Source of the DNA: Dicyema japonicum
Lineage: Eukaryota; Animalia; Dicyemida
Assembly: GCA_011109175.1 (NCBI GenBank)
Contig: RDEW01000013.1
Coordinates: 837,839 to 901,838, forward strand
Length of the DNA stretch: 64,000 nt
Direction of reading: 5' to 3'
Program-made: the position numbers and the translations under genes
Shown here: positions 33,265-51,109 of the stretch, in pieces
Numbering within the stretch: the first letter of the stretch is position 1
Layout: each line of letters starts with the position of its first letter
The notes under the pieces: generated by a model
What the model saw: the letters and a program-made list of their open reading frames with translations, nothing else
Database searches by the model: none
What the model was told of the DNA's origin: nothing

Positions 33265-33708
33265 GTGCTTGAAAATGTGATATCGAAAATTATAGTGAAC
33301 GTATTGAAAGGTGTATCCGGAATATGGAAGAGTGGTACTCACCCAGTCCTGATGAACGTGTACAAACAGTACATCGAGCCATGTTTCTCATATGTATGCG
33401 TCTCGTGGGGACCGTCCATATCTTGGACAAATATGAGGAAAATTGAGGAAATGAAAAAGAGGGCTTACAGAGTAACGGAGCGTTGGATTCGTGAAGATCA
33501 CAGAACTGGACTTACGCCTCTGGAGCCCCTTTTGAGAGTAGATTCCAGATCACGGGAATGTGGCCTTGAAAATTCAGTCATCCGTCCAGTACGTTCATGC
33601 TCGGGCACGAGGGAAGAACACCGGGCAAAGATGAGGTCGCTGCTAGAATGCATCGGGGCGTCAATGATAACTAGTTTGGTTTTACCGTGGTCTTGGGTTG
33701 TTAAATAA
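33265..33708 (+). mobile_element. LINE RT C-terminal relic; repeated in each A unit (40229-40616, 47144-47520)
   Basis: LMNVYKQYIEPCFSYVCVSWGPSISWTNMRKIE; related relics at about 59860, 61030, 62080 and 63250. Confidence 0.7.
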
Positions 33709-33997
33709 AAATAAACAGTAGCTTCTTATTAGGTGGGAAAAGTGACTTTTAATATGTTATTAATGACAATTAAACAGTCAATTCGAGGACCACGTGGCGG
33801 CCACCTCATTGTATGGTTACTTGCTCTCAGGATTGCGAACGAAATTCCCTCAAATAGCTTGCAATGCTCGCGGGATCATCATTGCGTGTCGAAATCCGAT
33901 TTTCTAGTCTCCTTCTCCCACTATGTAATTTCACGTTGTTCTAAACAACAGTCCAATTAGCGGTCTCACTTTTTTCATATCACTGGTTACGGTTCTA

Positions 33998-34192
33998 GGT
34001 AAATTCATCGCCGGTAAATTCATCGCTGGTAATTTTATCGCTGGTAAATTCATCGCTGGTAAATTCATCGCCGGTAAATTCATCGCGAGGTAAATTCATC
34101 GCTGGTAAATTCATCGCCGGTAAATTCATCGCTGGTAATTTCATCGCGAGGTAAATTCATCGCTGGTAAATTCATCGCCGGTTAATTCAAGC
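33998..34192 (+). repeat. 15-bp tandem array (GGTAAATTCATCGCY), about 13 units, within the MULE TIR
   Basis: Read directly; also at about 40907-41101 and 47824-48019, and inverted at about 50337-50545. Confidence 0.95.
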
Positions 34193-34503
34193 GACCACGT
34201 GGGTTCTTAAAAAAAGAGGTCGAAATTTTGATTTTTTATATTATCATTAAAATGTAATTTTGGAGATTAATTTGACGATATGAGTCACGTGGCCAGATCC
34301 CCAAGATAGAAGAAATTTGAAAACCTCAATTCTCCAAATAGTGTTAAATTTACTCAACGATGTGCACACACACGTGTGTGTATTGGTTAAAGTGATAGAA
34401 AAATTATTGATTATCTTACTGATTATTGATTAATAACAATGGTCAAACTTTAAGTGAATATTTATGATAATATAATTTTTAGAAAACAAGTTTATGACAA
34501 TTA

Positions 34504-35901
34504 TTAAAAAAACATATTATAGGCAATGCCTTTTAAATAGTCAAGAATTTCGCGATTATCGAAGTCATTTACAATGCGTTGAATTCTTAAAGCATTATCT
34601 CTGTATTTTTTCTTTTGTGTAGGACCTTCCCCACCAGCAATATACTGTTCAATTTTAATTTCATTTCTTGCTTGTTCTTTCTTCAAAACATCAATAAACT
34701 TCCAAATCGTAGATGACACGCTCCAATTAAAGAATTAAAAGAATGATGCCATCCTTCGCAAGAGTTATTCGTTTTAGGCCCAGCAACTCTCGCTGCTTCA
34801 AAACAATTCCACAATTCATGGGCAAAACGTGGACAACGACGTACTTGACGGCGGTCGGGACGTCCTATCCAAATATCTTCTACATAATCCAGTACAGGTT
34901 GAGCTTCTTCTGGGAAACTGTTGTAATCGCACAAATGTTCAAAATAATGACAACAACGTGTAATGTTGGGACAAATGCCAGCGCCGCAATCATGCGCATT
35001 TTCAGAGCGAATTCTGAATCTCTTTGATATAATAATTGCAATCCCTGTGATTGGATGCATCTAAATATGGATTGGGACAAATGAAAAAAACAGCCCTTCG
35101 TAATAGCATCAGGAAATATAATATTAAATCCATTTATAGCTGCTTTTTCGAAATCAGTCATAATTGTCCTCGGTGATAACGATGGCTCCAATGATTTTAA
35201 TTCCGAAAAAACTTTTTTATAGCTTTCTTCCGTTCTTTTACACATTAAAATGTATATAAGTGGTAAAACATCATTATTTACTAGTCCATGAATCGTATAT
35301 AATTGATTAAACAAATATGGGACTGTCTTAAAAGTACCATCCGCATACCAAAAGTTTGTAGTGGAAAGCAAATTTAGATTTTTTCTCGTTGTAAAAATTA
35401 TTGTTCTGTTAACACTGTCTTCACTATCAAACAATAGAAAAGGTTCATTGGCATAAGAGTATCTGTATTCTGGAGGTATTCTTAACTGGTCTATGTTAAG
35501 TGGATTAGGAGGAGCTTGATCTTTTGCATTTCTTGAATTTCTAATGTTTCTTTTAATTAAAGAAGCTATGGGTAGTCGGGCAGACACCTCTAGTGGCAAA
35601 CCCACACACACTTCAGTCGTAATAATATGTGGATTATCTTGTGATGCAAGAGCTCTTCTTTTTATTTCTTGAGTAATTCTCTTCGATTCGACATATGCAG
35701 CATCACCAGCATGATTGTGTTCGTTGACTCTTTTAATAATGATGTCTCCCTTGGTGTGTACTCTCGCTTTACATTTAATTTTGTAGTAGGATTCACATTT
35801 CCATAATGTGACTTCGCCATTAAATTTTCAAAACAGTAAATGTATCCATCTTCAAAAAGTTTTCTCTTATTTCTATCACTCATTACAAATTGCAAAGCCA
35901 T
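34504..35901 (-). CDS. FLYWCH-MULE transposase copy 1 (frameshifted as given)
   Basis: GYIY..WKC..CKARVHT..HNH (FLYWCH), WYADGTF, TDFEKAA..GCFFH, TNNSCEGWH. Confidence 0.85.
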
Positions 35902-35922
35902 GCTGTCAAGATATAAGAAATT

Positions 35923-38900
35923 GGAACGGAACGGAAAAATCTTTATTAGGCAAAAACAAATGTTAATAATAAGGAAGAACTAGACTAAAGGCCCTTTCAC
36001 CGCCTTGCGGCAGCGTTTCGTGCCATCACATTCGTCTTCCCCGTGCCTCCTTCTTTAATATTTAAGATTTAATTATCTCCCGGGTCCTTGAATCCGATAT
36101 CCTCTTTCGGGCAGCGGCGCTCTATAAGACAATCCTATAGGAATACCGTATTGCCCGCCGCCGAACCTTCCTCAAGTTGGTGAGGCACTTTTCGCGTTCC
36201 TCACTGCAATACCAGGAGTGCGCACCATAAGTGAGCATAGGCAGCACCATGGCGTTGAACACTTTGGCCCAGGCATCGCGACTCAGCTGAAAAGCCCTCA
36301 ACGCTCCTAATCTTTGCACAGCCCGCCTCTTAACGAGGGCGGTGTGCTCCTGGAAACTACACTTGGAGTTGAATGTCACTCCAAGGTAGCTCGTCCGCCC
36401 AGTAACCTCTATAGGTACCCCATAGATGGTTACTCTAGGTATTAAATTATTAGACCGCTTAGGGCGGCCAAAAACTAATAACTTACATTTCTCAGGTCTC
36501 AGCCTAAGTCCTCTGCTCCCACACCAGCGTATGATTTCATTGACAGCTACTTGAATCCTCCGACACGCTACATCTGGTTTCCACGAGTGATCCCAGAGTA
36601 CTATGTCGTCCGCATAGATAGCCATCTCCGTCCTCACATTGGCTGGGTGGGGAAGTGTAGACATGTAAACGTTGAAAAGGGTGGGGCTCAAAACCGACCC
36701 TTGTGGAACTCCCCGGTTAGATCTAAACAAACTAGATCGGCAACCTTTATGCCTTACATAGTTCATCCGATCCTCTAAGAAGCTTGATAACCAGCTCCTT
36801 AGCTCCAGAGATATTCCTCCTTCTGCGAGGGCGCAACGGAGGCCGTCATGCCAGACCGAGTCGAACGCCCTCTCCACATCCAGGAACAACGCGGCTGTGC
36901 ATTGCTTCTTGCTCCTTTCACGAATCTGAGAGCTCAACCTCCAGAGGCAGTCCCCACAGGAACGCCCCTCACGGAATCCCATCTGAAGGTCCGAGAGGGT
37001 GTCTTTTATTATGCATTCCTGGGTTAACCTCTGGTGTATCACTCTCTCTAAGATTTTAGCAACGGCAGGTAACAAGCTTATAGGGCGGTAGCTACTAGGG
37101 TCTTCAGGAGGTTTTCCTGGTTTCCTTACAAAAACCAGTTCCGCTTCCTTCCAACGCCTAGGAACGTAACCCAACCTGTAGCTACCGTTGTACAATCTTA
37201 CCAAGGTGTTCACGAGACTTCCAGGTCCTTTCTTGAAAAGGGCCATGGGGATCTTGTCTTGGCCCGGTGCGTTGTTCTTCGATTTACTTATCGCGGCCCG
37301 GACCTCCTCCTCGGTGATGCATGCCACCTTCGGGATCCCCGAGAGTGGCTCAACTTCCGTCTCTCCGCAGAGATGACGTCCTCTATACTTTGTCGAGCTG
37401 TTAACTCGACAAAGTTCTCTGGTCGAACTGCAGTAACTGCCCTAAAGCTACCTGCAAAGATGCTCGCTATTTCAGTCGGGTCAGAGGTTTTAGAACCGTC
37501 CGCACGACACAGGGTACGCGCAGATGACTCTTCCCCTCTGCCCGACAGGCGCTTCAGCTGACTCCAGAAGTCCGGCCATGCGGGGTTCACCCTCTCGCAG
37601 GCCCTCCTCCATTTGTTGCTCTGATAGTCGACGAGCGCCTTCCGGATTTCCCTTCGTAAGGTGTTTACCTTCTTCTGGTAGAAGATCCGGTTCTCTTCAT
37701 ACGTGCTCCTCGCTTTGAACCGCAGGTACCTCTTTCTAAGTGTTATCTTACTTAAAATCAGGCCTGGAATTCGTGCGGAGCCTCCACCTTGCGGACGTAA
37801 CCGGAAGTTAGTCCGCATGTATTCCTCGAGGATACCACCCAGGGTGGCATCCAATTCCTCCACGTCCGCTTCACTACAAACTTGCCCTTTGAGAGAGGGA
37901 GTTTTCTATCCCATGAACGACTCCAGGTTATCCCAAGTGCCAGAGCCCAAGTCATAGCCAATTGGGGCCTGAGGTCGAACAGGTTCGTGAAGCTCGGTGA
38001 GTAGGGGACGGTGATCGCTTCCGATGTCCCTAAGAACACGAGGTACAGAGAGCATACCAATTAATGAAGGGGAGGCTACGGCCATACCCAAGAAGTCCTC
38101 TCCTCCTCGTGTATCTTTGTGATTGGGGTCCGTCGATGTAGTGACTGAGAGCCCAAGATTCCAAGCTAATTCCCGGAGTGCTGATCCAGCCCTATTATTA
38201 ACAAAACAGCCAAAATCTGAATGCTTAGCATTCAGATCACCAAAAATAACGCAATGGGGATGAATGTCAAATACAGTTTTAATGTGGTCCTTACACAACC
38301 ACAACTGCTTGGCATACATTGCCCCTATAACAACGCTAAAGCTAGATAATCTGATTCGTAATAATATTAACTCGCAATGAGGACAATTTGAAATACCTTG
38401 GACGACTGCTGCTAGACTCGTCCTCCAATAGATACTAGTGCCCGAACCTCTATGTGTGTCATTCCACAAGAGATGACAACTAGTATAGCCTTTAAAGCCT
38501 GCAGCAGCCGTATCCTTACTCTTGGTCTCGTTAAGGACCAAGATGTCCACCTCCAAAGAGTCCAGAAGATCCTCGATGGCCTTCCTTCTTCTCCGGAGGG
38601 ACCTAACATTAACTGAAATGATGCGTAACATCACTTCGCCGCACTTACCTTCCTATCGCAGAGCGCAATGTCCCTAAGCGCATTAGGGAACGTTGAACCT
38701 GTGCTGCTACAGTATCGACTTACCACGCGGTGGACAGCGCTTACATCACTGACCACTCCAGAGGAGGGCGCCTGCCTTCTCCCCTGTGGTACCTTCTCCG
38801 TCGCCTCCTGATACAGGGGGCACTTGGTATGGCTCGCCCTGTGTCCCTCCAAGCCACAGTTCACGCACTTGAGAGACCTGACTCTGGATTGACAGGCCTT

Positions 38901-40228
38901 CCGTGAATGTGGACCCCCGCAATTTAGGCACTTCTCTTTATAAGTGCAGCGGGAGCTGGTGTGGCCGAATCCCTGGCATCTGTAGCACTGGATTGCTACC
39001 GGTCGCTCTCGGGCCACACCAAATCTAAAGTAACCTATCTTTAACTTCTCAAGGCAGATCCTCTCAGCTTCTGCTCCGGACCTGATCCAGACCTTGAGAG
39101 TCCTTAGTCTCTGACTCCCACTCTTGAAGCGCTCGATCTTGTGCGCCGTGGGGTAGTCCTTTTTGATGTACTCGAGTACATCCTCATCAACAAAGTCCAG
39201 AGGGACTCCGAAGACTAGTACAATCGAGTCGTGTACCTTGGGGATGACCCGAGACATGTTATGTGCCCCGGGCCCAAAAGGTACCTTCTTATTCACCTCA
39301 GCTTCAAAAGCTGAGGCGTCCACGTCATTTCTGAATCCCACCAACAAGTGGGATTCTCCTCGTCTGACGATCCTTCCTTTCGCATAGGTAGCCAGAGTAC
39401 CTATGCCACTTAGGAGTTTAACCACTCCTATCTTCGGCACCTCTAGCCGAACTAGTGTAGTTAGTCCTCCGAATACCTGTTCTTTCTTCTTTTCTTTCGG
39501 CACGTGCGCTCTGGATTGATTCGAGCCTGCAAAATGCTTTTTAGGGCACTTTGCGGTTTCTGGACCCGAATCACGCACGTTCTGCGGTTTGGCAGAAACC
39601 GCAGACTTCCTCTTTCTCCCTACTGTAGTCCAGCCTACAGTCATCGGGAGTTGGTCATCTTGACGTCCAGTATCGAGGGCAGGCACAGCCTGTTGGACCG
39701 CTGGCTGTGTGACGGATTCAGCCCTGCCCTCGGTCTCGGCCCTTGATCCTTTCAAGAGGCTGAGTCTTGCTCTCAACCTCCATCCTCCTCGTCCCAGGCA
39801 CAGCTTGTTCAACCGCTAGCTGTGCGGGGATGTCCTCCTCGGTCTTGGATCCATTACAGGAGGCTGAGTCTTGCTCTCAACCTCCATCCTCCTCGTTGCA
39901 GGCACAGCTTGTTCAACCGCTAGCTGTGTGGGGATGTCCGCTGCAATGTGGAAAGCAGCCCTGCCATCGATCCCCATGTTTACTCTGAAAGCCAGAAGGA
40001 TCGAGTCGCGAACGACCCTCTGAGCTTCTCCAAACCTCGGACTCCTCTAAAATATAGTCCAATAGTGGGCTTATTATGAAAGAGTCCTTGAACCACGTGG
40101 GCCGCTGTATCACAGACCACACGTGAGATGTCCTGATAATCCTCAATTTCGTACGGAATGTGTTGTGATATTTTTAAATCGCTTTGCACCTGACTTTCCT
40201 CCTTTTCACCTTTCCCAACGTCCAGACA
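35923..40228 (-). mobile_element. LINE with histone H4-like ORF1, copy 1 (Jockey/I-group-like, no RNase H evident)
   Basis: ORF1 with CCHC knuckles, ORF2 APE-RT, AATAAA at 35942-35947 followed by a (TTCCG)n tail. Confidence 0.92.
36055..38631 (-). CDS. LINE ORF2 (APE endonuclease plus RT), copy 1, frameshifted
   Basis: SVNVRS, LNET, GDLNA, SDH; YRPISLL, QMGFR, DVERAFD, GVPQGSVLSP, YADD, YLGV. Confidence 0.9.
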
Positions 40229-40229
40229 C
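38631..40229 (-). CDS. LINE ORF1: H4-like domain, repeats and Gag-like CCHC region, copy 1 (frameshifted)
   Basis: Aligns with copy 2; three knuckles CYRCQGFGHTSSRC, CLNCGGPHSRKAC and CVNCGLEGHRASHTKC. Confidence 0.8.
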
Positions 40230-40899
40230 GGAATATGGAAGAGTGGTACTCACCCAGTCCTGATGAACGTGTACAAACAGTACATCGAGCCATGTTTCTC
40301 ATATGTATGCGTCTCGTGGGGACCGTCCATATCTTGGACAAATATGAGGAAAATTGAGGAAATGAAAAAGAGGGCTTACAGAGTAACGGAGCGTTGGATT
40401 CGTGAAGATTCACAGAACTGGACCTACGCCTCTGGAGCCCCCTTTGAGAGTAGATTCCAGATCACGGGAATGTGCCTTGAAAATTCAGTCATCCGTCCAG
40501 TACGTTCATGCTCGGCACGAGGGAAGAACACGGGCAAAGATGAGGTCGCTGCTAGAATGCATCGGGGTCACATGATAACTAGTTTGGTTTTACCGTGGTC
40601 TTGGGTTGTTAAATAAAAATAAACAGTAGCTTCTTATTAGGTGGGAAAAGTGACTTTTAATATGTTATTAATGACAATTAAACAGTCAATTCGAGGACCA
40701 CGTGGCGGCCACCTCATTGTATGGTTACTTGCTCTCAGGATTGCGAACGAAATTCCCTCAAATAGCTTGCAATGCTCGCGGGGATCATCATTGCGTGTCG
40801 AAATCCGATTTTCTAGTCTCCTTCTCCCACTATGTAATTTCACGTTGTTCTAAACAACAGTCCAATTAGCGGTCTCACTTTTTTCATATCACTGGTTAC

Positions 40900-42823
40900 G
40901 GTTCTAGGTAAATTCATCGCCGGTAAATTCATCGCTGGTAATTTTATCGCTGGTAAATTCATCGCTGGTAAATTCATCGCCGGTAAATTCATCGCGAGGT
41001 AAATTCATCGCCGGTAAATTCATCGCCGGTAAATTCATCGCCGGTAATTTCATCGCGAGGTAAATTCATCGCTGGTAAATTCATCGCCGGTTAATTCAAG
41101 CGACCACGTGGGTTCTTAAAAAAAGAGGTCGAAATTTTGATTTTTTATATTATCATTAAAATGTAATTTTGGAGATTAATTTGACGATATGAGTCACGTG
41201 GCCAGATCCCCAAGATAGAAGAAATTTGAAAACCTCAATTCTCCAAATAGTGTTAAATTTACTCAACGATGTGCACCACACGTGTGTGTATTGGTTAAAG
41301 TGATAGAAAAATTATTGATTATCTTACTGATTATTGATTAATAACAAAGGTCAAACTTTAAGTGAATATTTATGATATAATTTTTAGAAAACAAGTTTAT
41401 GACAATTATAAAAAAACATATTATAGGCAATGCCTTTTAAATAGTCAAGAATTTCGCGATTATCGAAGTCATTTACAATGCGTTGAATTCTTAAAGCATT
41501 ATCTCTGTATTTTTTCTTTTGTGTAGGACCTTCCCCACCAGCAATATACTGTTCAATTTTAATTTCATTTCTTGCTTGTTCTTTCTTCAAAACATCAATA
41601 AACTTCCAAATCGTAGGATGACACGCTCCAATTAAAGAATTAAAAGAATGATGCCATCCTTCGCAAGAGTTATTCGTTTTAGGCCCAGCAACTCTCGCTG
41701 CTTCAAAACAATTCCACAATTCATGGGCAAAACGTGGACAACGACGTACTTGACGGCGGTCGGACGTCCTATCCAAATATCTTCTACATAATCCAGTACA
41801 GGTTGAGCTTCTTCTGGGAAACTGTTGTAATCGCACAAATGTTCAAAATAATGAACAACGTGTAATGTTGGGACAAATGCCAGCGCCGCAATCATGCGCA
41901 TTTTCAGAGCGAATTCTGAATCTCTTTGATATAATAATTGTAATCCCTGTGATTGGATGCATCTAAATATGGATTGGGACAAATGAAAAAAACAGCCCTT
42001 CGTAATAGCATCAGGAAATATAATATTAAATCCATTTATAGCTGCTTTTTCGAAATCAGTCATAATTGTCCTCGGTGATAACGATGGCTCCAATGATTTT
42101 AATTCCGAAAAACTTTTTTATAGCTTTCTTCCGTTCTTTTACACATTAAAATGTATATAAGTGGTAAAACATCATTATTTACTAGTCCATGAATCGTATA
42201 TAATTGATTAAACAAATATGGGACTGTCTTAAAAGTACCATCCGCATACCAAAAGTTTGTAGTGGAAAGCAAATTTAGATTTTTTCTCGTTGTAAAAATT
42301 ATTGTTCTGTTAACACTGTCTTCACTATCAAACAATAGAAAAGGTTCATTGGCATAAGAGTATCTGTATTCTGGAGGTATTCTTAACTGGTCTATTTAAG
42401 TGGATTAGGAGGAGCTTGATCTTTTGTATTTCTTGAATTTCTAATGTTTCTTTTAATTAAAGAAGCTATGGGTAGTCGGGCAGACATCTCCAGTGGCAAA
42501 CCCACACACACTTCAGTTATAATAATATGTGGATTATCTTGTGATGCAAGAGCTCTTCTTTTTATTTCTTGAGTAATTCTCTTTGATTCGACATATGCAG
42601 CATCACAAGCATGATTGTGTTCGTTGACTCTTTTAATAATGATGTCTCCCTTGGTGTGTACTCTCTCTTTACATTTAATTTTGTAGTAGGATTCACATTT
42701 CCATAATGTGACTTCGCCATTAAATTTTTCAAAACAGTAAATGTATCCATCTTCAAAAAGTTTTCTCTTATTTCTATCACTCATTACAAATTGCAAAGCC
42801 ATGCTGTCAAGATATAAGAAATT
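40900..42823 (-). mobile_element. MULE copy 2 (one TIR plus transposase, ATG at 42802)
   Basis: Same sequence as copies 1 and 3; CTGGTTAC at 40892-40899. Confidence 0.9.
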
Positions 42824-45800
42824 AACGGAACGGAAAAATCTTTATTAGGCAAAAAACAAATGTTAAGTAATCAGGGAAGAGCTAACTAAGGCCCTTTCAC
42901 CGCCTTGCGGCAGCGTTTTCGTGCCATCACATTCGTCTTCCCCGTGCCTCCTTCTTTAATTTATTTTTAAGATCTTTTTAATTACTTCCTCCGGGTCCTT
43001 GAAATCCGGATATCCTCTTTCAGGCAGCGGCGCTCTATAAGACAATCCTATAGAATACCGTATTGCCCGCCGCCGAACCTTCCTCAAGTTGGTGAGGCAC
43101 TTTTCGCGTTCCTCACTGCAATACCAGGAGTGCGCACCATAAGTGAGCATAGGCAGCACCATGGCGTTGAACACTTTGGCCCAGGCATCGCGACTCAGCT
43201 GAAAAGCCCTCAACGCTCCTAATCTTTGCACAGCCCGCCTCTTAACGAGGGCGGTGTGCTCCTGGAAACTACACTTGGAGTTGAATGTCACTCCAAGGTA
43301 GCTCGTCCGCCCAGTAACCTCTATAGGTACCCCATAGATGGTTACTCTAGGTATTAAATTATTAGACCGCTTAGGGCGGCCAAAAACTAATAACTTACAT
43401 TTCTCAGGTCTCAGCCTAAGTCCTCTGCTCCCACACCAGCGTATGATTTCATTGACAGCTACTTGAATCCTCCGACACGCTACATCTGGTTTCCACGAGT
43501 GATCCCAGAGTACTATGTCGTCCGCATAGATAGCCATCTCCGTCCTCACATTGGCTGGGTGGGGAAGTGTAGACATGTAAACGTTGAAAAGGGTGGGGCT
43601 CAAAACCGACCCTTGTGGAACTCCCCGGTTAGATCTAAACAAACTAGATCGGCAACCTTTATGCCTTACATAGTTCATCCGATCCTCTAAGAAGCTTGAT
43701 AACCAGCTCCTTAGCTCCAGAGATATTCCTCCTTCTGCGAGGGCGCAACGGAGGCCGTCATGCCAGACCGAGTCGAACGCCCTCTCCACATCCAGGAACA
43801 ACGCGGCTGTGCATTGCTTCTTGCTCCTTTCACGAATCTGAGAGCTCAACCTCCAAGGCAGTCCCCACAGGAACGCCCCTCACGGAATCCCATCTGAAGG
43901 TCCGAGAGGGTGTCTTTTATTATGCATTCCTGGGTTAACCTCTGGTGTATCACTCTCTCTAAGATTTTAGCAACGGCAGGTAACAAGCTTATAGGGCGGT
44001 AGCTACTAGGGTCTTCAGGAGGTTTTCCTGGTTTCCTTACAAAAACCAGTTCCGCTTCCTTCCAACGCCTAGGAACGTAACCCAACCTGTAGCTACCGTT
44101 GTACAATCTTACCAAGGTGTTCACGAGACTTCCAGGTCCTTTCTTGAAAAGGGCCATGGGGATCTTGTCTTGGCCCGGTGCGTTGTTCTTCGATTTACTT
44201 ATCGCGGCCCGGACCTCCTCCTCGGTGATGCATGCCACCTTCGGGATCCCCGAGAGTGGCTCAACTTCCGTCTCTCCGTAGAGATGACGTCCTCTATACT
44301 TTGTCGAGCTGTTAACTCGACAAAGTTCTCTGGTCGAACTGCAGTAACTGCCCTAAAGCTACCTGCAAAGATGCTCGCTATTTCAGTCGGGTCAGAGGTT
44401 TTAGAACCGTCCGCACGACACAGGGTACGCGCAGATGACTCTTCCCCTCTGCCCGACAGGCGCTTCAGCTGACTCCAGAAGTCCGGCCATGCGGGGTTCA
44501 CCCTCTCGCAGGCCCTCCTCCATTTGTTGCTCTGATAGTCGACGAGCGCCTTCCGGATTTCCCTTCGTAAGGTGTTTACCTTCTTCTGGTAGAAGATCCG
44601 GTTCTCTTCATACGTGCTCCTCGCTTTGAACCGCAGGTACCTCTTTCTAAGTGTTATCTTACTTAAAATCAGGCCTGGAATTCGTGCGGAGCCTCCACCT
44701 TGCGGACGTAACCGGAAGTTAGTCCGCATGTATTCCTCGAGGATACCACCCAGGGTGGCATCCAATTCCTCCACGTCCGCTTCACTACAAACTTGCCCTT
44801 TGAGAGAAGGGAGTTTTCTATCCATGAACGACTCCAGGTTATCCCAAGTGCCAGAGCCCAAGTCATAGCCAATTGGGGCCTGAGGTCGAACAGGTTCGTG
44901 AAGCTCGGTGAGTAGGGGACGGTGATCGCTTCCGATGTCCCTAAGAACACGAGGTACAGAGAGCATACCAATTAATGAAGGGGAGGCTACGCCATACCCA
45001 AGAAGTCCTCTCCTCCTCGTGTATCTTTTGTGATTGGGGTCCGTCGATGTAGTGACTGAGAGCCCAAGATTCCAAGCTAATTCCCGGAGTGCTGATCCAG
45101 CCCTATTATTAACAAAACAGCCAAAATCTGAATGCTTAGCATTCAGATCACCAAAAATAACGCAATGGGGATGAATGTCAAATACAGTTTTAATGTGGTC
45201 CTTACACAACCACAACTGCTTGGCATACATTGCCCCTATAACAACGCTAAAGCTAGATAATCTGATTCGTAATAATATTAACTCGCAATGAGGACAATTT
45301 GAAATACCTTGGACGACTGCTGCTAGACTCGTCCTCCAATAGATACTAGTGCCCGAACCTCTATGTGTGTCATTCCACAAGAGATGACAACTAGTATAGC
45401 CTTTAAAGCCTGCAGCAGCCGTATCCTTACTCTTGGTCTCGTTAAGGACCAAGATGTCCACCTCCAAAGAGTCCAGAAGATCCTCGATGGCCTTCCTTCT
45501 TCTCCGGAGGGACCTAACATTAACTGAAATGATGCGTAACATCACTTCGCCGCACTTACCTTCCTATCGCAGAGCGCAATGTCCCTAAGCGCATTAGGGA
45601 ACGTTGAACCTGTGCTGCTACAGTATCGACTTACCACGCGGTGGACAGCGCTTACATCACTGACCACTCCAGAGGAGGGCGCCTGCCTTCTCCCCTGTGG
45701 TACCTTCTCCGTCGCCTCCTGATACAGGGGGCACTTGGTATGGCTCGCCCTGTGTCCCTCCAAGCCACAGTTCACGCACTTGAGAGACCTGACTCTGGAT

Positions 45801-47143
45801 TGACAGGCCTTCCGTGAATGTGGACCCCCGCAATTTAGGCACTTCTCTTTATAAGTGCAGCGGGAGCTGGTGTGGCCGAATCCCTGGCATCTGTAGCACT
45901 GGATTGCTACCGGTCGCTCTCGGGCCACACCAAATCTAAAGTAACCTAACTTTAACTTCTCAAGGCAGATCCTCTCAGCTTCTGCTCCGGACCTGATCCA
46001 GACCTTGAGAGTCCTTAGTCTCTGACTCCCACTCTTGAAGCGCTCGATCTTGTGCGCCGTGGGGTAGTCCTTTTTGATGTACTCGAGTACATCCTCATCA
46101 ACAAAGTCCAGAGGGACTCCGAAGACTAGTACAATCGAGTCGTGTACCTTGGGGATGACCCGAGACATGTTATGTGCCCCGGGCCCAAAAGGAACCTTCT
46201 TATTCACCTCAGCTTCAAAAGCTGAGGCGTCCACGTCATTCCTGAATCCCACCAACAAGTGGGATTCTCCTCGTCTGACGATCCTTCCTTTCGCATAGGT
46301 AGCCAAAGTACCTATGCCACTTAGGAGTTTAACCACTCCCATCTTCGGCACCTCTAGCCGAACTAGTGTAGTTAGTCCTCCGAATACCTGTTCTTTCTTC
46401 TTTTCTTTCGGCACGTGCGCTCTGGATTGATTCGAGCCTGCAAAATGCTTTTTAGGGCACTTTGCGGTTTCTGGACCCGAATCACGCACGTTCTGCGGTT
46501 TGGCAGAAACCGCAGACTTCCTCTTTCTCACTACTGTAGTCCAGCCTACAGTCATTGGGAGATGGTCCTCTTGTTTTCCTTCGTCGAGGGCAGGCACAGC
46601 CTGTTGGACCGCTGGCTGTGTGACGGATTCAGCCCTGCCCTCGGAACTCGGTCTTTGATTCTTTTCAAGAGGCTGAGTCTTGCCCTCAACCTCCATCCTC
46701 CTCGTCCCAGGCACAGCTTGTTCAACCGCTAGCTGTGCTGGGATGTTTTCCTCGTCCTTGATCCATTACAGGAGGCTGAGTCTTGCTCTCAACCTCCATC
46801 CTCCTCGGTGCAGGCACAGCTTGATCAACCGCTTGCTGTGTGGGGATGTCCGCTGCAGTGTGGAAAGCAGCCCTGCCATCGATCCCCATATTTATTCGGA
46901 ATGACAGAAGGATCGAGTCGCGAACGACCCTTCTGAGCTTCTCGACTCCTCGGACTCCTCTAAAATATAATCCAATATTGGGCTTATTTTCGAAGAGTCC
47001 ATTTACCACGTGGGCCGCTGTATCACAGACCACACGTGAGATGTCCTGATAATCCTCAAGATTTCGTACGGAATGTGTTGTGATATTTTTAAATCGCTTT
47101 GCACCTGACTTTCCTCCTTTTCCACCTTTCCCACGTCCAGACA
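42824..47143 (-). mobile_element. LINE with histone H4-like ORF1, copy 2
   Basis: Same architecture as copy 1; tail TTCCGTTCCGTT. Confidence 0.92.
42956..45542 (-). CDS. LINE ORF2 (APE plus RT), copy 2, frameshifted
   Basis: ORF pieces 44199-45545, 43846-44238 and 42956-43849 carry all APE and RT motifs. Confidence 0.9.
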
Positions 47144-47144
47144 C
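45542..47144 (-). CDS. LINE ORF1: histone H4-like N-terminus fused to a Gag-like CCHC protein, copy 2 (about 535 aa by consensus)
   Basis: ORF 46722-47144 ([16 protein letters not shown]..) and ORF 45542-46714 join if the indel near 46755 is corrected using copy 1. Confidence 0.8.
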
Positions 47145-47816
47145 GGAATATGGAAGAGTGGTACTCTCCCAGTCCTGATGAACGTGTACAAACAGTACAT
47201 CGAGCCATGTTTCTCATATGCATGCGTCTCGTGGGGACCGTCCATATCTTGGACAAATATGAGGAAAATTGAGGAAATGAAAAAGAGGGCTTACAGAGTA
47301 ACGGAGCGTTGGATTCGTGAAGATCACAGAACTGGACCTACGCCTCTGGAGCCCCCTTTGAGAGTAGATTCCAGATCACGGGAATGTGGCCTTGAAAATT
47401 CAGTCATCCGTCCAGTACGTTCATGCTCGGGCACGAGGGAAGAACACCGGGCAAAGATGAGGTCGCTGCTAGAATGCATCGGGATCACGTGATAACTAGT
47501 TTGGTTTTACCGTGGTCTTGGGTTGTTAAATAAAAATAAACAGTAGCTTCTTATTAGGTGGGAAAAGTGACTTTTAATATGTTAGTAATGACAATTAAAC
47601 AGTCAATTCGAGGACCACGTGGCGGCCACCTCATTGTATGGTTACTTGCTCTCATGATTGCGAACGAAATTCCCTCAAATAGCTTGCAATGCTCGCGAGG
47701 ATCATCATTGCGTGTCGAAATCCGATTTTCTAGTCTCCTTCTCCCACTATGTAATTTCACGTTGTTCTTAACAACAGTCCAATTAGCGGTCTCACTTTTT
47801 TCATATCACTGGTTAC

Positions 47817-50552
47817 GGTTCTAGGTAAATTCATCGCCGGTAAATTCATCGCTGGTAATTTTATCGCTGGTAAATTCATCGCGTGGTAAATTCATCGCCG
47901 GTATATTCATCGTGAGGTAAATTCATCGCGAGTAAATTCATCGCCGGTAAATTCATCGCTGGTAATTTCATCGCGAGGTAAATTCATCGCTGGTAAATTC
48001 ATCGCCGGTTAATTCAAGCGACCACGTGGGTTCTTAAAAAAGAGGTCGAAATTTTGATTTTTTATATTATCATTAAAATGTAATTTTGGAGATTAATTTG
48101 ACGATATGAGTCACGTGGCCAGATCCCCAAGATAGAAGAAATTTGAAAACCTCAATTCTCCAAATAGTGTTAAATTTACTCAACGATGTGCACCACACGT
48201 GTGTGTATTGGTTAAAGTGATAGAAAAATTATTGATTATCTTACTGATTATTGATTAATAACAATGGTCAAACTTTAAGTGAATATTTATGATAATATAA
48301 TTTTTAGAAAACAAGTTTATGACAATTATTAAAAAAACATATTATAGGCAATGCCTTTTAAATAGTCAAGAATTTCGCGATTATCGAAGTCATTTACAAT
48401 GCGTTGAATTCTTAAAGCATTATCTCTGTATTTTTTCTTTTGTGTAGGACCTTCCCCACCAGCAATTATACTGTTCAATTTTTAATTTCATTTCTTGCTT
48501 GTTCTTTCTTCAAAACATCAATAAACTTCCAAATCGTAGGATGACACGCTCCAATTAAAGAATTAAAAGAATGATGCCATCCTTCGCAAGAGTTATTCGT
48601 TTTAGGCCCAGCAACTCTCGCTGCTTCAAAACAATTCCACAATTCATGGGCAAAACGTGGACAACGACGTACTTGACGGCGGTCGGGACGTCCTATCCAA
48701 ATATCTTCTACATAATCCAGTACAGGTTGAGCTTCTTCTGGGAAACTGTTGTAATCACACAAATGTTCAAAATAATGAACAACGTGTAATGTTGGGACAA
48801 ATGCCAGCGCCGCAATCATGCGCATTTTCAGAGCGAATTCTGAATCTCTTTGATATAATAATTGAATCCTGTGATTGGATGCATCTAAATATGGATTGGG
48901 ACAAATGAAAAAAACAGCCCTTCGTAATAGCATCAGGAAATATAATATTAAATCCATTTATAGCTGCTTTTTCGAAATCAGTCATAATTGTCCTCGGTGA
49001 TAACGATGGCTCCAATGATTTTAATTCCGAAAAAACTTTTTTATAGCTTTCTTCCGTTCTTTTACACATTAAAATGTATATAAGTGGTAAAACATCATTA
49101 TTTACTAGTCCATGAATCGTATATAATTGATTAAACAAATATGGGACTGTCTTAAAAGTACCATCCGCATACCAAAAGTTTGTAGTGGAAAGCAAATTTA
49201 GATTTTTTCTCGTTGTAAAAATTATTGTTCTGTTAACACTGTCTTCACTATCAAACAATAGAAAAGGTTCATTGGCATAAGAGTATCTGTATTCTGGAGG
49301 TATTCTTAACTGGTCTATGTTAAGTGGATTAGGAGGAGCTTGATCTTTTGTATTTCTTGAATTTCTAATGTTTCTTTTAATTAAAGAAGCTATGGGTAGT
49401 CGGGCAGACACCTCAGTGGCAAACCCACACACACTTCAGTCGTAATAATATGTGGATTATCTTGTGATGCAAGAGCTCTTCTTTTTATTTCTTGAGTAAT
49501 TCTCTTTGATTCGACATATGCAGCATCACCAGCATGATTGTGTTCGTTGACTCTTTTAATAATGATGTCTCCCTTGGTGTGTACTCTCGCTTTACATTTA
49601 ATTTTGTAGTAGGATTCACATTTCCATAATGTGACTTCGCCATTAAATTTTTCAAAACAGTAAATGTATCCATCTTCAAAAAATTTTCTCTTATTTCTAT
49701 CACTCATTACAAATTGCAAAGCCATGCTGTCAAGATATAAGAAATTAGCGAAAAAATATCACTTTATAGTAATCAATTATGATAATGACGATAAAGTACA
49801 AAAGAATTCAAGGGCATTATCACCACATTACAAAAGAATTCAAGGACATTATCATAGATTATAAGCTACTTTATCAGTTAAAAGAAACACAATTACATGC
49901 AACCATTACTCTTGTGTTTAAGATAGAGATGAATACTGTCCTCAGCACTAAAGAAAACTGGCAATTTTATGTTTCAATCGTCGTATATAGATGAATACTG
50001 ACAGAGTTATTTATTTTATTATTTGTAAGCCACAGGCGTACAATCTTTGGTAAGCCTAGCAAAAACAGTCATTGGTAATTAATCCAAGGAGGGAACGCAA
50101 AAGAGAACGTCTGCTTGTGACAACTAAATTGATCCCGCCAATAATACATGGCAGGCATACGTCAACTTCTGAAGAGAGGTGAAAAAATAGGTCCTCTCTC
50201 TTCAGTTTTCATAGGTCCTACCGTCACGGATACATGATTCCTATCGCCGAATAATCTCCAAAATCGCAATTTAACTATAATATAAAAAATCAAAATTTCG
50301 ACCTCTTCTATCTAGACACCACACGTGGTCTTTGATTAACGGATGAATTTACCTCGCGATGAATTTACCAGCGATGAATTTACCGGCGATGAATTACCGG
50401 CGATGAATTTACCCGCGATGAATTTACCGCGAATTTACCTCGCGATGAATTTACCGGCGATGAATTTACCGGCGATGAATTTACCAGCGATGAATTTACC
50501 GGCGATGAATTTACCGGCGATGAAATTACCGGCGATGAATTTACCGGTTACC
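47817..50552 (-). mobile_element. Complete FLYWCH-MULE DNA transposon (2.74 kb) with modular TIRs
   Basis: Roughly 270-bp inverted ends (15-bp arrays plus gaggtcgaaattttgattttttatatta); 8-bp TSD CTGGTTAC at 47809-47816 and 50553-50560. Confidence 0.93.
48329..49725 (-). CDS. FLYWCH-MULE transposase copy 3 (about 465 aa by consensus)
   Basis: Same motifs as copy 1; frameshifts fall at different positions in each copy. Confidence 0.85.
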
Positions 50553-51109
50553 CTGGTTACACTAAGAGGAAAGAAGTTCAGGGAGAAACGCTAGATAGTG
50601 ACCCCAAAATTGGTCTTCCAAAACATTTTCCTTACCGTCATTATGGGAAAGCTATTAATCCTTTCCACGTGTCTCTAATATTAATAAACAACTAAAATTT
50701 TGTCATTTTAATTAATTTTCTTTTTCTCCCTTCTATCAGATAGAAATTGTGATGGAAGATCTTGTAGGATCCTGTAGATCCCGTCGGACTCACAAAGTTT
50801 TTCTTGATTGTGGAGGGGACGTTTAATGCTGTCTTGGATGCGTATTTGAAAAGGGGGATCTTCCTGAACTCAAAAGGAGGATTTCCAGTTTACGTGAAGG
50901 GAGGCTTAACCAAATGAGGCACAAAGAAACTGTTCTAGTATTCTCAGGACTAACCGAAAAGGTCCAAGAGGCTCTATCCTAAGTCTAACCCTTTCGAGTG
51001 TGTCTTTACTTTGTTTCCTACGGCGAATACAAAAGCTGTAACTACGAGGATCCAAATTGCTAAGAATTCGACAAAGCAAACTACAACAGTGCAAGAAAAC
51101 GGTTATAAA

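What the first reader, a model, noticed from the sequence alone, without database searches (positions are those of the whole stretch)
46700..47144. LINE whose ORF1 begins with a histone H4-like domain fused to Gag
Seen: the element's first codons encode (M)[16 protein letters not shown]. This matches H4 [17 protein letters not shown] at 15 of 17 positions and keeps S1, R3, K5, K8, K12 and K16 equivalents, while H18-R19-K20 become FKN. Further on, GLYFRGVRGVEK--LRRVVRDSI aligns with H4 helix 2 [23 protein letters not shown], and HTAADI with VTAMDV, so it looks like a diverged whole H4 and not just a tail. The break between this ORF and the Gag ORF differs between copies (GATCAAGGAC in copy 2, GATCCAAGACC in copy 1). 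Merging them gives GATCCAAGGACC, 12 nt, which restores one ORF of about 535 aa: H4-like domain, repeat linker, RRM-like region, three CCHC knuckles. Known: LINE ORF1s gain accessory domains such as PHD and esterase, and some DNA viruses encode histones, but I know of no LINE ORF1 with an H4 domain. Inference: a captured histone acting as a chromatin mimic, for example for nuclear import, recruiting histone chaperones or bromodomain readers, pairing with H3 to target the RNP, or decoying silencing enzymes.
Basis: partly seen in the sequence, partly recalled or inferred. Interest (0 to 1): 0.93.

Follow-up and report, generated by a model that had tools for sequence, protein, structure and literature searches.

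The report
LINE that borrows histone gene starts
The "histone H4-like domain" is the first 21 codons of the animal's own H4 gene (then about six codons of its H2B gene) carried at the front of a dead jumping gene, which belongs to a LINE family that takes its start codon and first codons from histone genes.

Summary
The H4 match is real, but it is a tail and not a diverged whole H4. The genome fits Dicyema japonicum (67.5 Mb, 377 scaffolds).

On the minus strand the element is made of:
- 47143-47082: H4 coding bases 2-63, with the start codon reading GTG
- 47081-47062: H2B codons about 20-26
- from 47061: LINE-specific sequence with no histone fold by Pfam, hhalign, a 1.84-billion-protein HMM search, AlphaFold or fold searches

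All full-length relatives start with H2B codons 1-25. Sublineages add H4 (21-30 codons) or H3 (17 codons) in front. On contig C343, the tandem histone cluster, H4-headed copies sit behind 706 bases of H4 upstream sequence. Six of seven distinct secondary junctions are in frame.

LINE 3' tails directly abut histone 5' ends in at least 8 places. The two window copies lie outside any histone cluster. They are broken and are DNA-level tandem duplicates (7.27-kb unit).

Most likely the LINE captured histone promoter and start codon and carried them along by 5' transduction. Chromatin mimicry is untested.

The scan had already found this family on other DNA of this genome. I found no published report.

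The parts
47082..47143 (-). H4-derived head: host H4 coding bases 2-63 (codons 1-21). The would-be start codon 47144-47142 reads GTG, and K20 is changed to N.
   Evidence: 97% identical over 62 bases to H4 genes at C343:125923 and others. Host H4 translation, base-level comparison. Contigs from H4 genes and longer-headed copies diverge exactly at 47082 and 47143 (loose ends).
47062..47081 (-). Remnant of the older H2B head (H2B codons about 20-26). It reads TTHSVR here and TTRALR in the H2B gene and in the C224 copy.
   Evidence: Base-level comparison of the H2B gene, H2B-headed copies and H4-headed copies.
46722..47061 (-). LINE-specific N-terminal part of ORF1: predicted helices (residues 29-53, 55-61, 64-86 of the 140-codon frame), then the start of the repeat linker. 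It has no ATG of its own until about residue 86.
   Evidence: Shared by H2B-, H3- and H4-headed copies. AlphaFold core pLDDT 71-85. No histone among Foldseek or VIA hits. One weak hit among 1.84 billion proteins.
46651..46849 (-). Tandem repeat linker, period 103 bases, 1.9 copies. It holds the frame break between the 140-codon frame and the gag frame, near 46753-46760.
   Evidence: Break sequences. Read contigs with two extra letters at 46753 and 46759.
45542..46714 (-). ORF1 gag-like part with CCHC zinc knuckles (390 codons).
   Evidence: PF15288 E 6.8e-7 and PF00098 E 0.0026. Translation.
44199..45545 (-). ORF2 front: apurinic-type endonuclease. It overlaps the ORF1 stop.
   Evidence: PF03372 E 2.1e-13 and PF14529 E 3.4e-8.
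42956..44238 (-). ORF2 reverse-transcriptase part, split into two frames (43846-44238 and 42956-43849), so it is broken.
   Evidence: ORF list. The matching part of copy 1 (36122-37327) gives PF00078 E 1.7e-40 and hits R2 and L1 ORF2 structures.
42824..42955 (-). 3' untranslated end and short (CCGTT)n tail of copy 2.
   Evidence: The same end is found about 30 times in the genome.
35923..40228 (-). Copy 1 of the same H4-headed LINE. Its head also starts at GTG, with small indels in the head, a broken linker and a broken ORF2.
33319..47500 (-). DNA-level tandem duplication: two 7.27-kb units at 98.2% identity. Each is LINE + FLYWCH/MULE transposase gene + 12-base tandem repeat + reversed RT-tail fragment. 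One more LINE-less unit lies at 47145-49753.
   Evidence: Differences are patchy: 48 of about 100 mismatches fall in 46503-47251.
47145..47492 (+). Flank: C-terminal fragment of another LINE's reverse transcriptase, in opposite orientation, abutting the H4 head. There is no H4 promoter here.
   Evidence: The same fragment ends at the same base at 33320 without a LINE behind it.

Best explanation
COMPOSITION (shown). The 140-codon frame is the front of ORF1 of a LINE of Dicyema japonicum. It is a stack of three parts:
- codons 1-21 of the animal's own H4 gene;
- about six codons left from its H2B gene;
- a LINE-specific helical region with no histone fold.

FAMILY PATTERN (shown). The LINE-specific part has no start codon of its own. 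Every full-length member starts with H2B codons 1-25, including old sublineages whose body is only about 50% identical. Younger sublineages have a second head in front: H4 codons 1-21 to 1-30, or H3 codons 1-17. In the tandem histone cluster on contig C343, H4-headed copies sit directly behind 706 bases of H4 upstream sequence.

MECHANISM (inferred). The element lands in or just upstream of the 5' end of a histone gene. It is then transcribed from the histone promoter and translated from the histone ATG. Because the RNA starts at the histone start site, the head travels with it (5' transduction). Only in-frame fusions can make ORF1 protein and spread. Copies that land elsewhere keep the head but have no promoter.

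WINDOW COPIES (shown). The two copies are such dispersed copies. No histone gene lies nearby. The start codon reads GTG, and the frames are broken in the linker and in ORF2. The two copies were made from one by a recent DNA tandem duplication, not by two jumps.
For: - Host H4, H2B and H3 sequences, and base-level mapping of the heads.
- H4 homology ends at base 63 or 91. Cluster copies share H4 upstream sequence from -706 to +91 at 93-98% identity.
- C343 is a tandem H2A/H2B/H4/H3 cluster.
- There are five distinct H4-to-LINE junctions (bases 63, 69, 75, 78, 91) plus one H3 junction, all in frame, and one decayed copy out of frame. If frame were random, 6 or more of 7 in frame has P about 0.007.
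- LINE tails are directly followed by histone sequence starting 4-58 bases before the ATG at 8 or more places. These include the dispersed loci C24, C314 and C246.
- 13 of 30 LINE 3' ends lie in or beside histone genes.
- An H2B head is present in diverged sublineages (C68, C373, C310). The C68 head is 74/77 bases identical to the H2B gene, while its body is 53% identical in protein.
- No histone fold was found.
- The window copies are a tandem DNA duplicate.
- No histone-fold genes or other H4 starts lie on this part of C35.
Against: - No RNA data were available, so transcription from histone promoters and the RNA start sites are inferred only (one search found no run on record as RNA).
- No target-site duplication could be read for the window copy, because it sits in a tandem array.
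- The dispersed H4-headed copies could equally be template-switch chimeras between LINE RNA and H4 mRNA.
- A tree of the LINE-specific N-terminal region does not separate head types, so heads may also move by recombination or gene conversion.
- The H2B head stays closer to the gene than the body does between sublineages. This could mean the tail itself is under selection and has a function beyond supplying a start codon.
- Many older ORF1 relatives are dispersed (570 first-look candidates), so histone genes are a preference and not a strict target.
Confidence: 0.75

Rival explanations
1. The histone tails are working parts of ORF1 protein, kept by selection. They could act as a nuclear import signal, as a handle for histone chaperones or tail readers, or as a homing device that pairs the cDNA with histone genes. 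This is a reduced form of the first reader's idea, limited to the tail.
For: - All interpretable junctions but one are in frame.
- The H2B head is retained across sublineages whose bodies have diverged to about 50%, and it stays 84-96% identical in DNA to the H2B gene.
- Three different core-histone tails have been placed on the same protein.
- From general knowledge: the N-terminal tails of core histones carry import signals in yeast.
Against: - In-frame junctions are also required if the head only supplies the ATG.
- In dead copies the heads decay like the rest. The C312 copy has 5 of 16 tail residues changed at 72% overall DNA identity.
- No H4-headed copy has an open ORF1.
- High DNA identity of the head to the gene, including silent sites, fits re-capture or gene conversion better than protein-level selection.
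- No binding or localisation data exist.
Confidence: 0.25
2. The window element is a template-switch chimera. During reverse transcription the enzyme jumped from the H2B-headed LINE RNA onto an H4 mRNA and copied it to its 5' end. So the copy never sat in an H4 gene.
For: - The head of the window copy starts at base 2 of the H4 coding sequence with no promoter upstream. The C224 copy starts about 5-9 bases before the ATG.
- There is short shared sequence at the junctions: C at base 63, CACAA at base 91.
- Head-to-tail LINE-LINE and LINE-H4 pseudogene joins at C24 and C314 look like end-to-end template jumps.
Against: - Copies with the base-91 junction sit behind 706 bases of H4 upstream sequence in the histone cluster. 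Template switching alone cannot give that.
- 5' transduction from such a copy gives the same dispersed product, so the two routes cannot be told apart for this copy.
Confidence: 0.3
3. One reading: a captured and diverged complete H4 histone-fold domain on ORF1.
For: Only the tail match and short resemblances such as RVVRDSIL to RTIRDCIS.
Against: - DNA homology to H4 ends at base 63 or 91.
- The following residues come from H2B and from a region shared with H2B- and H3-headed copies.
- Pfam finds none. hhalign probability is 0.2% against H4 and 0.7% against H2B.
- The predicted helices are long-short-long, not a histone fold. No histone appears among Foldseek or VIA hits.
Confidence: 0.03
4. 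Assembly artefact: a false join of an H4 gene start to a LINE.
For: The genome is a repeat-rich, heterozygous short-read and PacBio assembly with 4% gaps. An earlier scan note reports one head fragment at a bad contig join.
Against: The same composite head occurs on several contigs with different flanks and with five different junctions. Contigs of independent runs cover the head-to-body region.
Confidence: 0.03

Closest known systems
rDNA-specific LINEs R2 and R1 (and other target-specific non-LTR elements reviewed in PMC5035012)
   Same: They live in a tandem, highly expressed multigene family. They are thought to depend on the host gene's transcription rather than a promoter of their own. 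Target sequence carried on the element RNA can help form precise junctions (general knowledge of R2 and R1).
   Different: - The host genes here are protein-coding, and the element takes the host's ATG and first 17-30 codons into its own ORF1.
- Insertion points vary (4-58 bases before the ATG for the 3' end, coding bases 55-91 for the 5' join).
- Many copies are dispersed.
- The list of known LINE targets in PMC5035012 (rRNA, tRNA and snRNA genes, microsatellites, telomeric repeats, transposons) has no histone genes.
- The clade of this LINE was not determined.
Spliced-leader-gene LINEs (SLACS, CZAR, CRE, NeSL-1)
   Same: From general knowledge: they insert near the 5' end of a tandem, strongly transcribed host gene, carry its first bases at their own 5' end, and are driven by its promoter.
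   Different: Those hosts are small RNA genes and no host codons are translated. Those elements use a restriction-like endonuclease, whereas this one has an apurinic-type endonuclease.
L1 5' transduction and L1 chimeric retrocopies (for example U6-L1) made by template switching
   Same: Host sequence is attached to the 5' end of a LINE and copied to new loci. Short shared bases occur at the joins (general knowledge).
   Different: Those are sporadic, non-coding passengers. Here the passenger supplies the start codon, is in frame, is present in all full-length members, and is stacked from up to two histone genes.
LINE ORF1 accessory domains (PHD, esterase) and viral histone-tail mimics or viral histones
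   Same: A host-like chromatin-related peptide sits on a mobile element's structural protein.
   Different: No folded domain was captured here, only disordered tails that are near-identical in DNA to the host genes. No evidence of mimicry was obtained.

Membership tests
Histone H4 / histone fold (Pfam PF15511, PF00125) | H4 N-terminal tail sequence | tested here: met
   Residues 2-19 are identical to the host's own H4. The DNA is 97% identical over 62 bases. All PDB hits are H4 tails.
Histone H4 / histone fold (Pfam PF15511, PF00125) | Histone fold (short helix, long helix, short helix) recognisable by profile or structure | tested here: not met
   No Pfam family at E<=1. hhalign probability 0.2% against H4 and 0.7% against H2B. 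AlphaFold helices are 29-53, 55-61 and 64-86. No histone in Foldseek or VIA lists.
Histone H4 / histone fold (Pfam PF15511, PF00125) | Homology to H4 continuing past the tail | tested here: not met
   Homology ends at coding base 63 in the window and at base 91 in cluster copies.
Apurinic-endonuclease-type LINE (non-LTR retrotransposon) | Endonuclease and reverse-transcriptase domains in ORF2 | tested here: met
   PF03372 E 2e-13, PF14529 E 3e-8, PF00078 E 2e-40. PDB hits are to R2 and L1 ORF2 proteins.
Apurinic-endonuclease-type LINE (non-LTR retrotransposon) | Gag-like ORF1 with CCHC knuckles; many copies with a common 3' end and variable 5' ends | tested here: met
   The 3' end is shared by about 30 copies, with short (CCGTT)n or (ATTC)n tails.
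Apurinic-endonuclease-type LINE (non-LTR retrotransposon) | Target-site duplication around this copy | tested here: inconclusive
   The copy lies in a LINE-unit-LINE-unit array, and no empty site or short duplication can be read.
Target-specific LINE | Nearly all copies at one defined site | tested here: not met
   17 of 30 3' ends, and most older ORF1 relatives, are away from histone genes.
Target-specific LINE | Recurrent insertion at the same kind of site | tested here: met
   At 8 or more places LINE tails are followed by H4, H3 or H2B sequence starting 4-58 bases before the ATG. Three of these are on contigs outside the main cluster.
5' transduction from a host promoter | Host-derived 5' segment on dispersed copies that lack the donor's upstream sequence | tested here: met
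   The window copies and the C224 copy have the H4 head but unrelated upstream DNA.
5' transduction from a host promoter | Element RNA starting at the host gene's transcription start | not testable with these tools
   No run on record as RNA held the stretch. Only contigs of runs of unknown or DNA kind were available.

The most novel reading that the evidence does not exclude
This LINE family is an obligate user of core-histone genes. It has no promoter or start codon of its own, homes to histone 5' ends, is expressed with the histones, and carries histone tails as working parts of ORF1 protein (import, chaperone binding, or homology-guided joining to histone genes). Stacked heads would then record successive host genes.
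Probability: 0.3. Interest if true: 0.85.

Novelty: new variant of a known kind. Interest (0 to 1): 0.6.

Why it matters
LINEs are known to ride on rRNA, snRNA, tRNA and spliced-leader genes. I found no report of a LINE that takes promoter, start codon and first codons from protein-coding histone genes.

If the inference holds, it shows a new way for a promoter-less retrotransposon to get transcribed and translated. It may couple the element's expression to S phase. It also puts real H2B, H3 and H4 tails on a nucleic-acid-binding gag protein, which makes histone-tail function on a non-histone protein directly testable.

It also matters for annotation. Such heads produce false "divergent histone" calls in this genome.

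For this window alone the result is more modest. The two copies are decayed. Their value is that they show the H4 head travelling to a non-histone locus.

Tried and rejected
- WHOLE DIVERGED H4: rejected (see rival explanations).
- THE 'MVQKVSTKGSK...' LEADER AS A DIVERGED H3 TAIL. This was my own first idea, because two copies begin MARTKQTARKSTGAKVPR. I rejected it once the host genes were read. The leader is host H2B codons 1-25, and the H3 part is only codons 1-17 placed in front of it.
- THE LINE-SPECIFIC BODY AS A DECAYED H3 OR H2B FOLD (GLF...LRRVVR against H3 helices). BLASTP against H2B matches residues 1-25 only. hhalign, Pfam, AlphaFold and fold searches were negative.
- HOMOLOGUES ELSEWHERE. 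The word-index search with the 542-codon ORF1 gave 4 weak knuckle-level hits. The profile search of the body against 1.84 billion proteins gave one weak repetitive hit. These blanks do not show absence of shorter or longer relatives.
- RNA EVIDENCE. None could be had. The contigs are short, so the flank-to-head junction at 47143 was not seen bridged in the rows shown.
- CLADE OF THE LINE: not resolved.
- TREE OF HEAD TYPES: unresolved, with head types intermixed.
- NOT RUN: complex prediction with H3, because I make no binding claim.

Full report
WHAT IS AT THE COORDINATES
The element lies on the minus strand. A 140-codon open frame runs from 47144 to 46722 and begins [20 protein letters not shown]. 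It is followed, in another frame, by:
- a 390-codon gag-like ORF1 with CCHC knuckles (45542-46714);
- an apurinic-type endonuclease (44199-45545);
- a broken reverse transcriptase;
- a 3' end at 42824 with a short (CCGTT)n tail.

A second copy lies at 35923-40228. The two are not independent jumps. They belong to two 7.27-kb tandem units that are 98.2% identical. Each unit is LINE, FLYWCH/MULE transposase gene, 12-base tandem repeat and a reversed fragment of another LINE. In both copies the first codon is GTG, not ATG.

THE HOST AND ITS HISTONES
The assembly has 67,542,437 bases in 377 contigs. That matches the published Dicyema japonicum genome of 67.5 Mb in 377 scaffolds (PMC6736024). The paper mentions LINE ORF2 copies but never histones.

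Contig C343 (113-173 kb) is a tandem histone cluster with units of about 5.3 kb holding H2A, H2B, H4 and H3. The host's own H4 starts [37 protein letters not shown]. The host's H2B starts MVQKVSTKGSKRAAVKVSSTTRALRKKKK, and its H3 starts MARTKQTARKSTGAKVPRKQLSAKS.

THE HEAD IS A STACK
Base by base:
- Window 47143-47082 is H4 coding bases 2-63, 97% identical to H4 genes on C343.
- 47081-47062 corresponds to H2B codons about 20-26.
- From 47061 the sequence is LINE-specific.

Relatives come in three head types:
- H2B codons 1-25 plus two bases, then the LINE (C343:140715, C343:142546, C223, C2).
- H3 codons 1-17, five extra bases, then the H2B head (C343:116718, C61).
- H4 then part of the H2B head.

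The H4 type has five different junctions:
- H4 base 91 (C343:149760, C343:134627);
- base 63 (this window, C224);
- base 75 (C343:129372);
- base 69 (C312);
- base 78 joined to H2B codon 16 (C24).

With the H3 junction, that makes six secondary junctions in frame. One heavily decayed copy (C343:155204) is out of frame. If frame were random, 6 or more of 7 in frame has a probability of about 0.007. The LINE-specific part has no ATG until about residue 86, so the head supplies the start codon.

Diverged sublineages (body about 43-53% identical in protein) on C68, C373 and C310 also begin with the H2B head at the same junction. The C68 head is 74/77 bases identical to the H2B gene. The H2B head is therefore old and general. 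The H4 and H3 heads are later additions.

NOT A HISTONE FOLD
- H4 homology stops at base 63 or 91.
- BLASTP against host H2B matches residues 1-25 only.
- Pfam finds nothing in the 140-codon frame at E<=1.
- hhalign of an 11-copy alignment of the body gives probability 0.7% against H2B and 0.2% against H4.
- A profile search of 1.84 billion proteins gives one weak repetitive hit and no histone.
- AlphaFold gives a disordered tail (residues 1-28). It then gives helices 29-53, 55-61 and 64-86, with pLDDT 71-85 in the core and mean 57.6.
- Foldseek finds nothing at E<=1 (best E 3.6). VIA-align's best match is Z 6.0 to generic helical hairpins, with no histone in 50 rows.

The model is only of moderate confidence, so this is absence of support, not proof of a different fold.

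HOW THE HEADS ARISE
In the cluster, H4-headed copies share the H4 unit from 706 bases upstream to coding base 91, at 93-98% identity. LINE sequence follows.

These cluster copies are ORF1-only elements with the LINE 3' end. They are followed at once by a complete H4 gene that starts 8-9 bases before its ATG, or 58 bases in one case. So a segment of about 100 bases (-9 to +91) is present on both sides, like a long target duplication or a homology-guided join.

More generally, LINE tails are directly followed by histone sequence starting 4-58 bases before the ATG at 8 or more places. These include an H3 gene on C246, an H4-headed LINE on C24 and an H4 pseudogene on C314. Thirteen of 30 LINE 3' ends lie in or beside histone genes. 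Even so, the wider ORF1 family is dispersed (570 first-look candidates).

I infer three steps:
1. The element lands at histone 5' ends.
2. It is read from the histone promoter and ATG.
3. It carries the head to new sites.

Template switching onto histone mRNA could give the same dispersed products. A tree of the LINE-specific region does not separate head types, so recombination or conversion also moves heads.

THE WINDOW COPIES
The nearest upstream DNA is an unrelated reversed LINE fragment. No histone-fold gene or other H4 start lies on this part of C35. The head starts at base 2 of the H4 coding sequence.

Both copies are broken in the 103-base repeat linker and in ORF2.

A cluster copy has a single 542-codon frame, although its ORF2 is split. 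Contigs from all four public runs carry two extra letters at 46753 and 46759. Those contigs may come from this locus or from relatives. I repaired no frame and built no consensus. No copy I examined has all frames open, and no H4-headed copy has an open ORF1.

Differences between the two window copies are patchy: 48 of about 100 mismatches fall in 46503-47251. Copy 1 matches a C113-like variant there, which suggests conversion from other family members after the duplication.

RELATION TO EARLIER WORK
Earlier notes of this scan, on other windows of the same genome, already describe LINEs that take histone gene starts, including H2B::ORF1, H4::H2B::ORF1 and H3::H2B::ORF1. One of them gave me the lead that the second leader is H2B, and I checked that myself.

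I found no published description in four full-text literature searches, and the D. japonicum genome paper does not mention histones. A review-style list of LINE targets has no histone genes (PMC5035012).

VERDICT
It is a histone tail, not a histone domain. Its most economical meaning is capture of a promoter and start codon by a histone-gene-associated LINE family. A working role for the tails stays open, at about one chance in four.

Noticed in passing
window 33319-49753: The array is unit, LINE, unit, LINE, unit, where the unit is a FLYWCH/MULE transposase gene, a 12-base tandem repeat and a reversed RT-tail fragment (about 2.6 kb). Each LINE tail ends 21 bases before the ATG of the FLYWCH/MULE gene. 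This recalls the LINE tails that end just before histone ATGs. How the array formed (a very long target duplication, 3' transduction, or unequal crossing-over) is unexplained.
   Followed up: partly
window 46503-47251, 44754-45002 and 42759-43005, against copy 1: Differences between the two tandem copies are concentrated in three patches. The rest shows 0-2 differences per 250 bases. In the first patch copy 1 resembles a copy on C113, which suggests gene conversion from other family members.
   Followed up: partly
L033 (G000:C343:133001-143000) and L037 (G000:C20:56001-65114): The host's core histones are unusual. H4 has a one-residue-shorter tail, F in place of H18, and several cysteines. There are two H4 gene types, the C343 type and the C20 type in a 3.2-kb repeat. 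They are only 86% identical in the first 62 coding bases.
   Followed up: no
L040 (G000:C314:230501-235500), minus strand near 2465: An H4 pseudogene with stops and frameshifts begins about 6 bases before its ATG, directly behind a LINE 3' end. It looks like an end-to-end template jump or an old insertion before an orphan H4.
   Followed up: partly
L010 (G000:C223:729083-732444), minus strand near 1915-1960: A partial H2B head (about bases 9-36) lies just in front of a full H2B head on one LINE copy, so one head type is stacked on itself.
   Followed up: no
window 47820-48010, 40920-41100, 33931-34083, 50343-50594: A 12-base tandem repeat (GGTAAATTCATC-like) recurs beside each FLYWCH/MULE unit. 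It gives spurious 'MNLPAMNLP' open frames.
   Followed up: no
L071 (G000:C68:673300-674500): A diverged LINE sublineage has an H2B head that is 96% identical in DNA to the H2B gene, while its body is only 53% identical in protein to the window's. The heads seem to be refreshed from, or exchanged with, the gene.
   Followed up: partly
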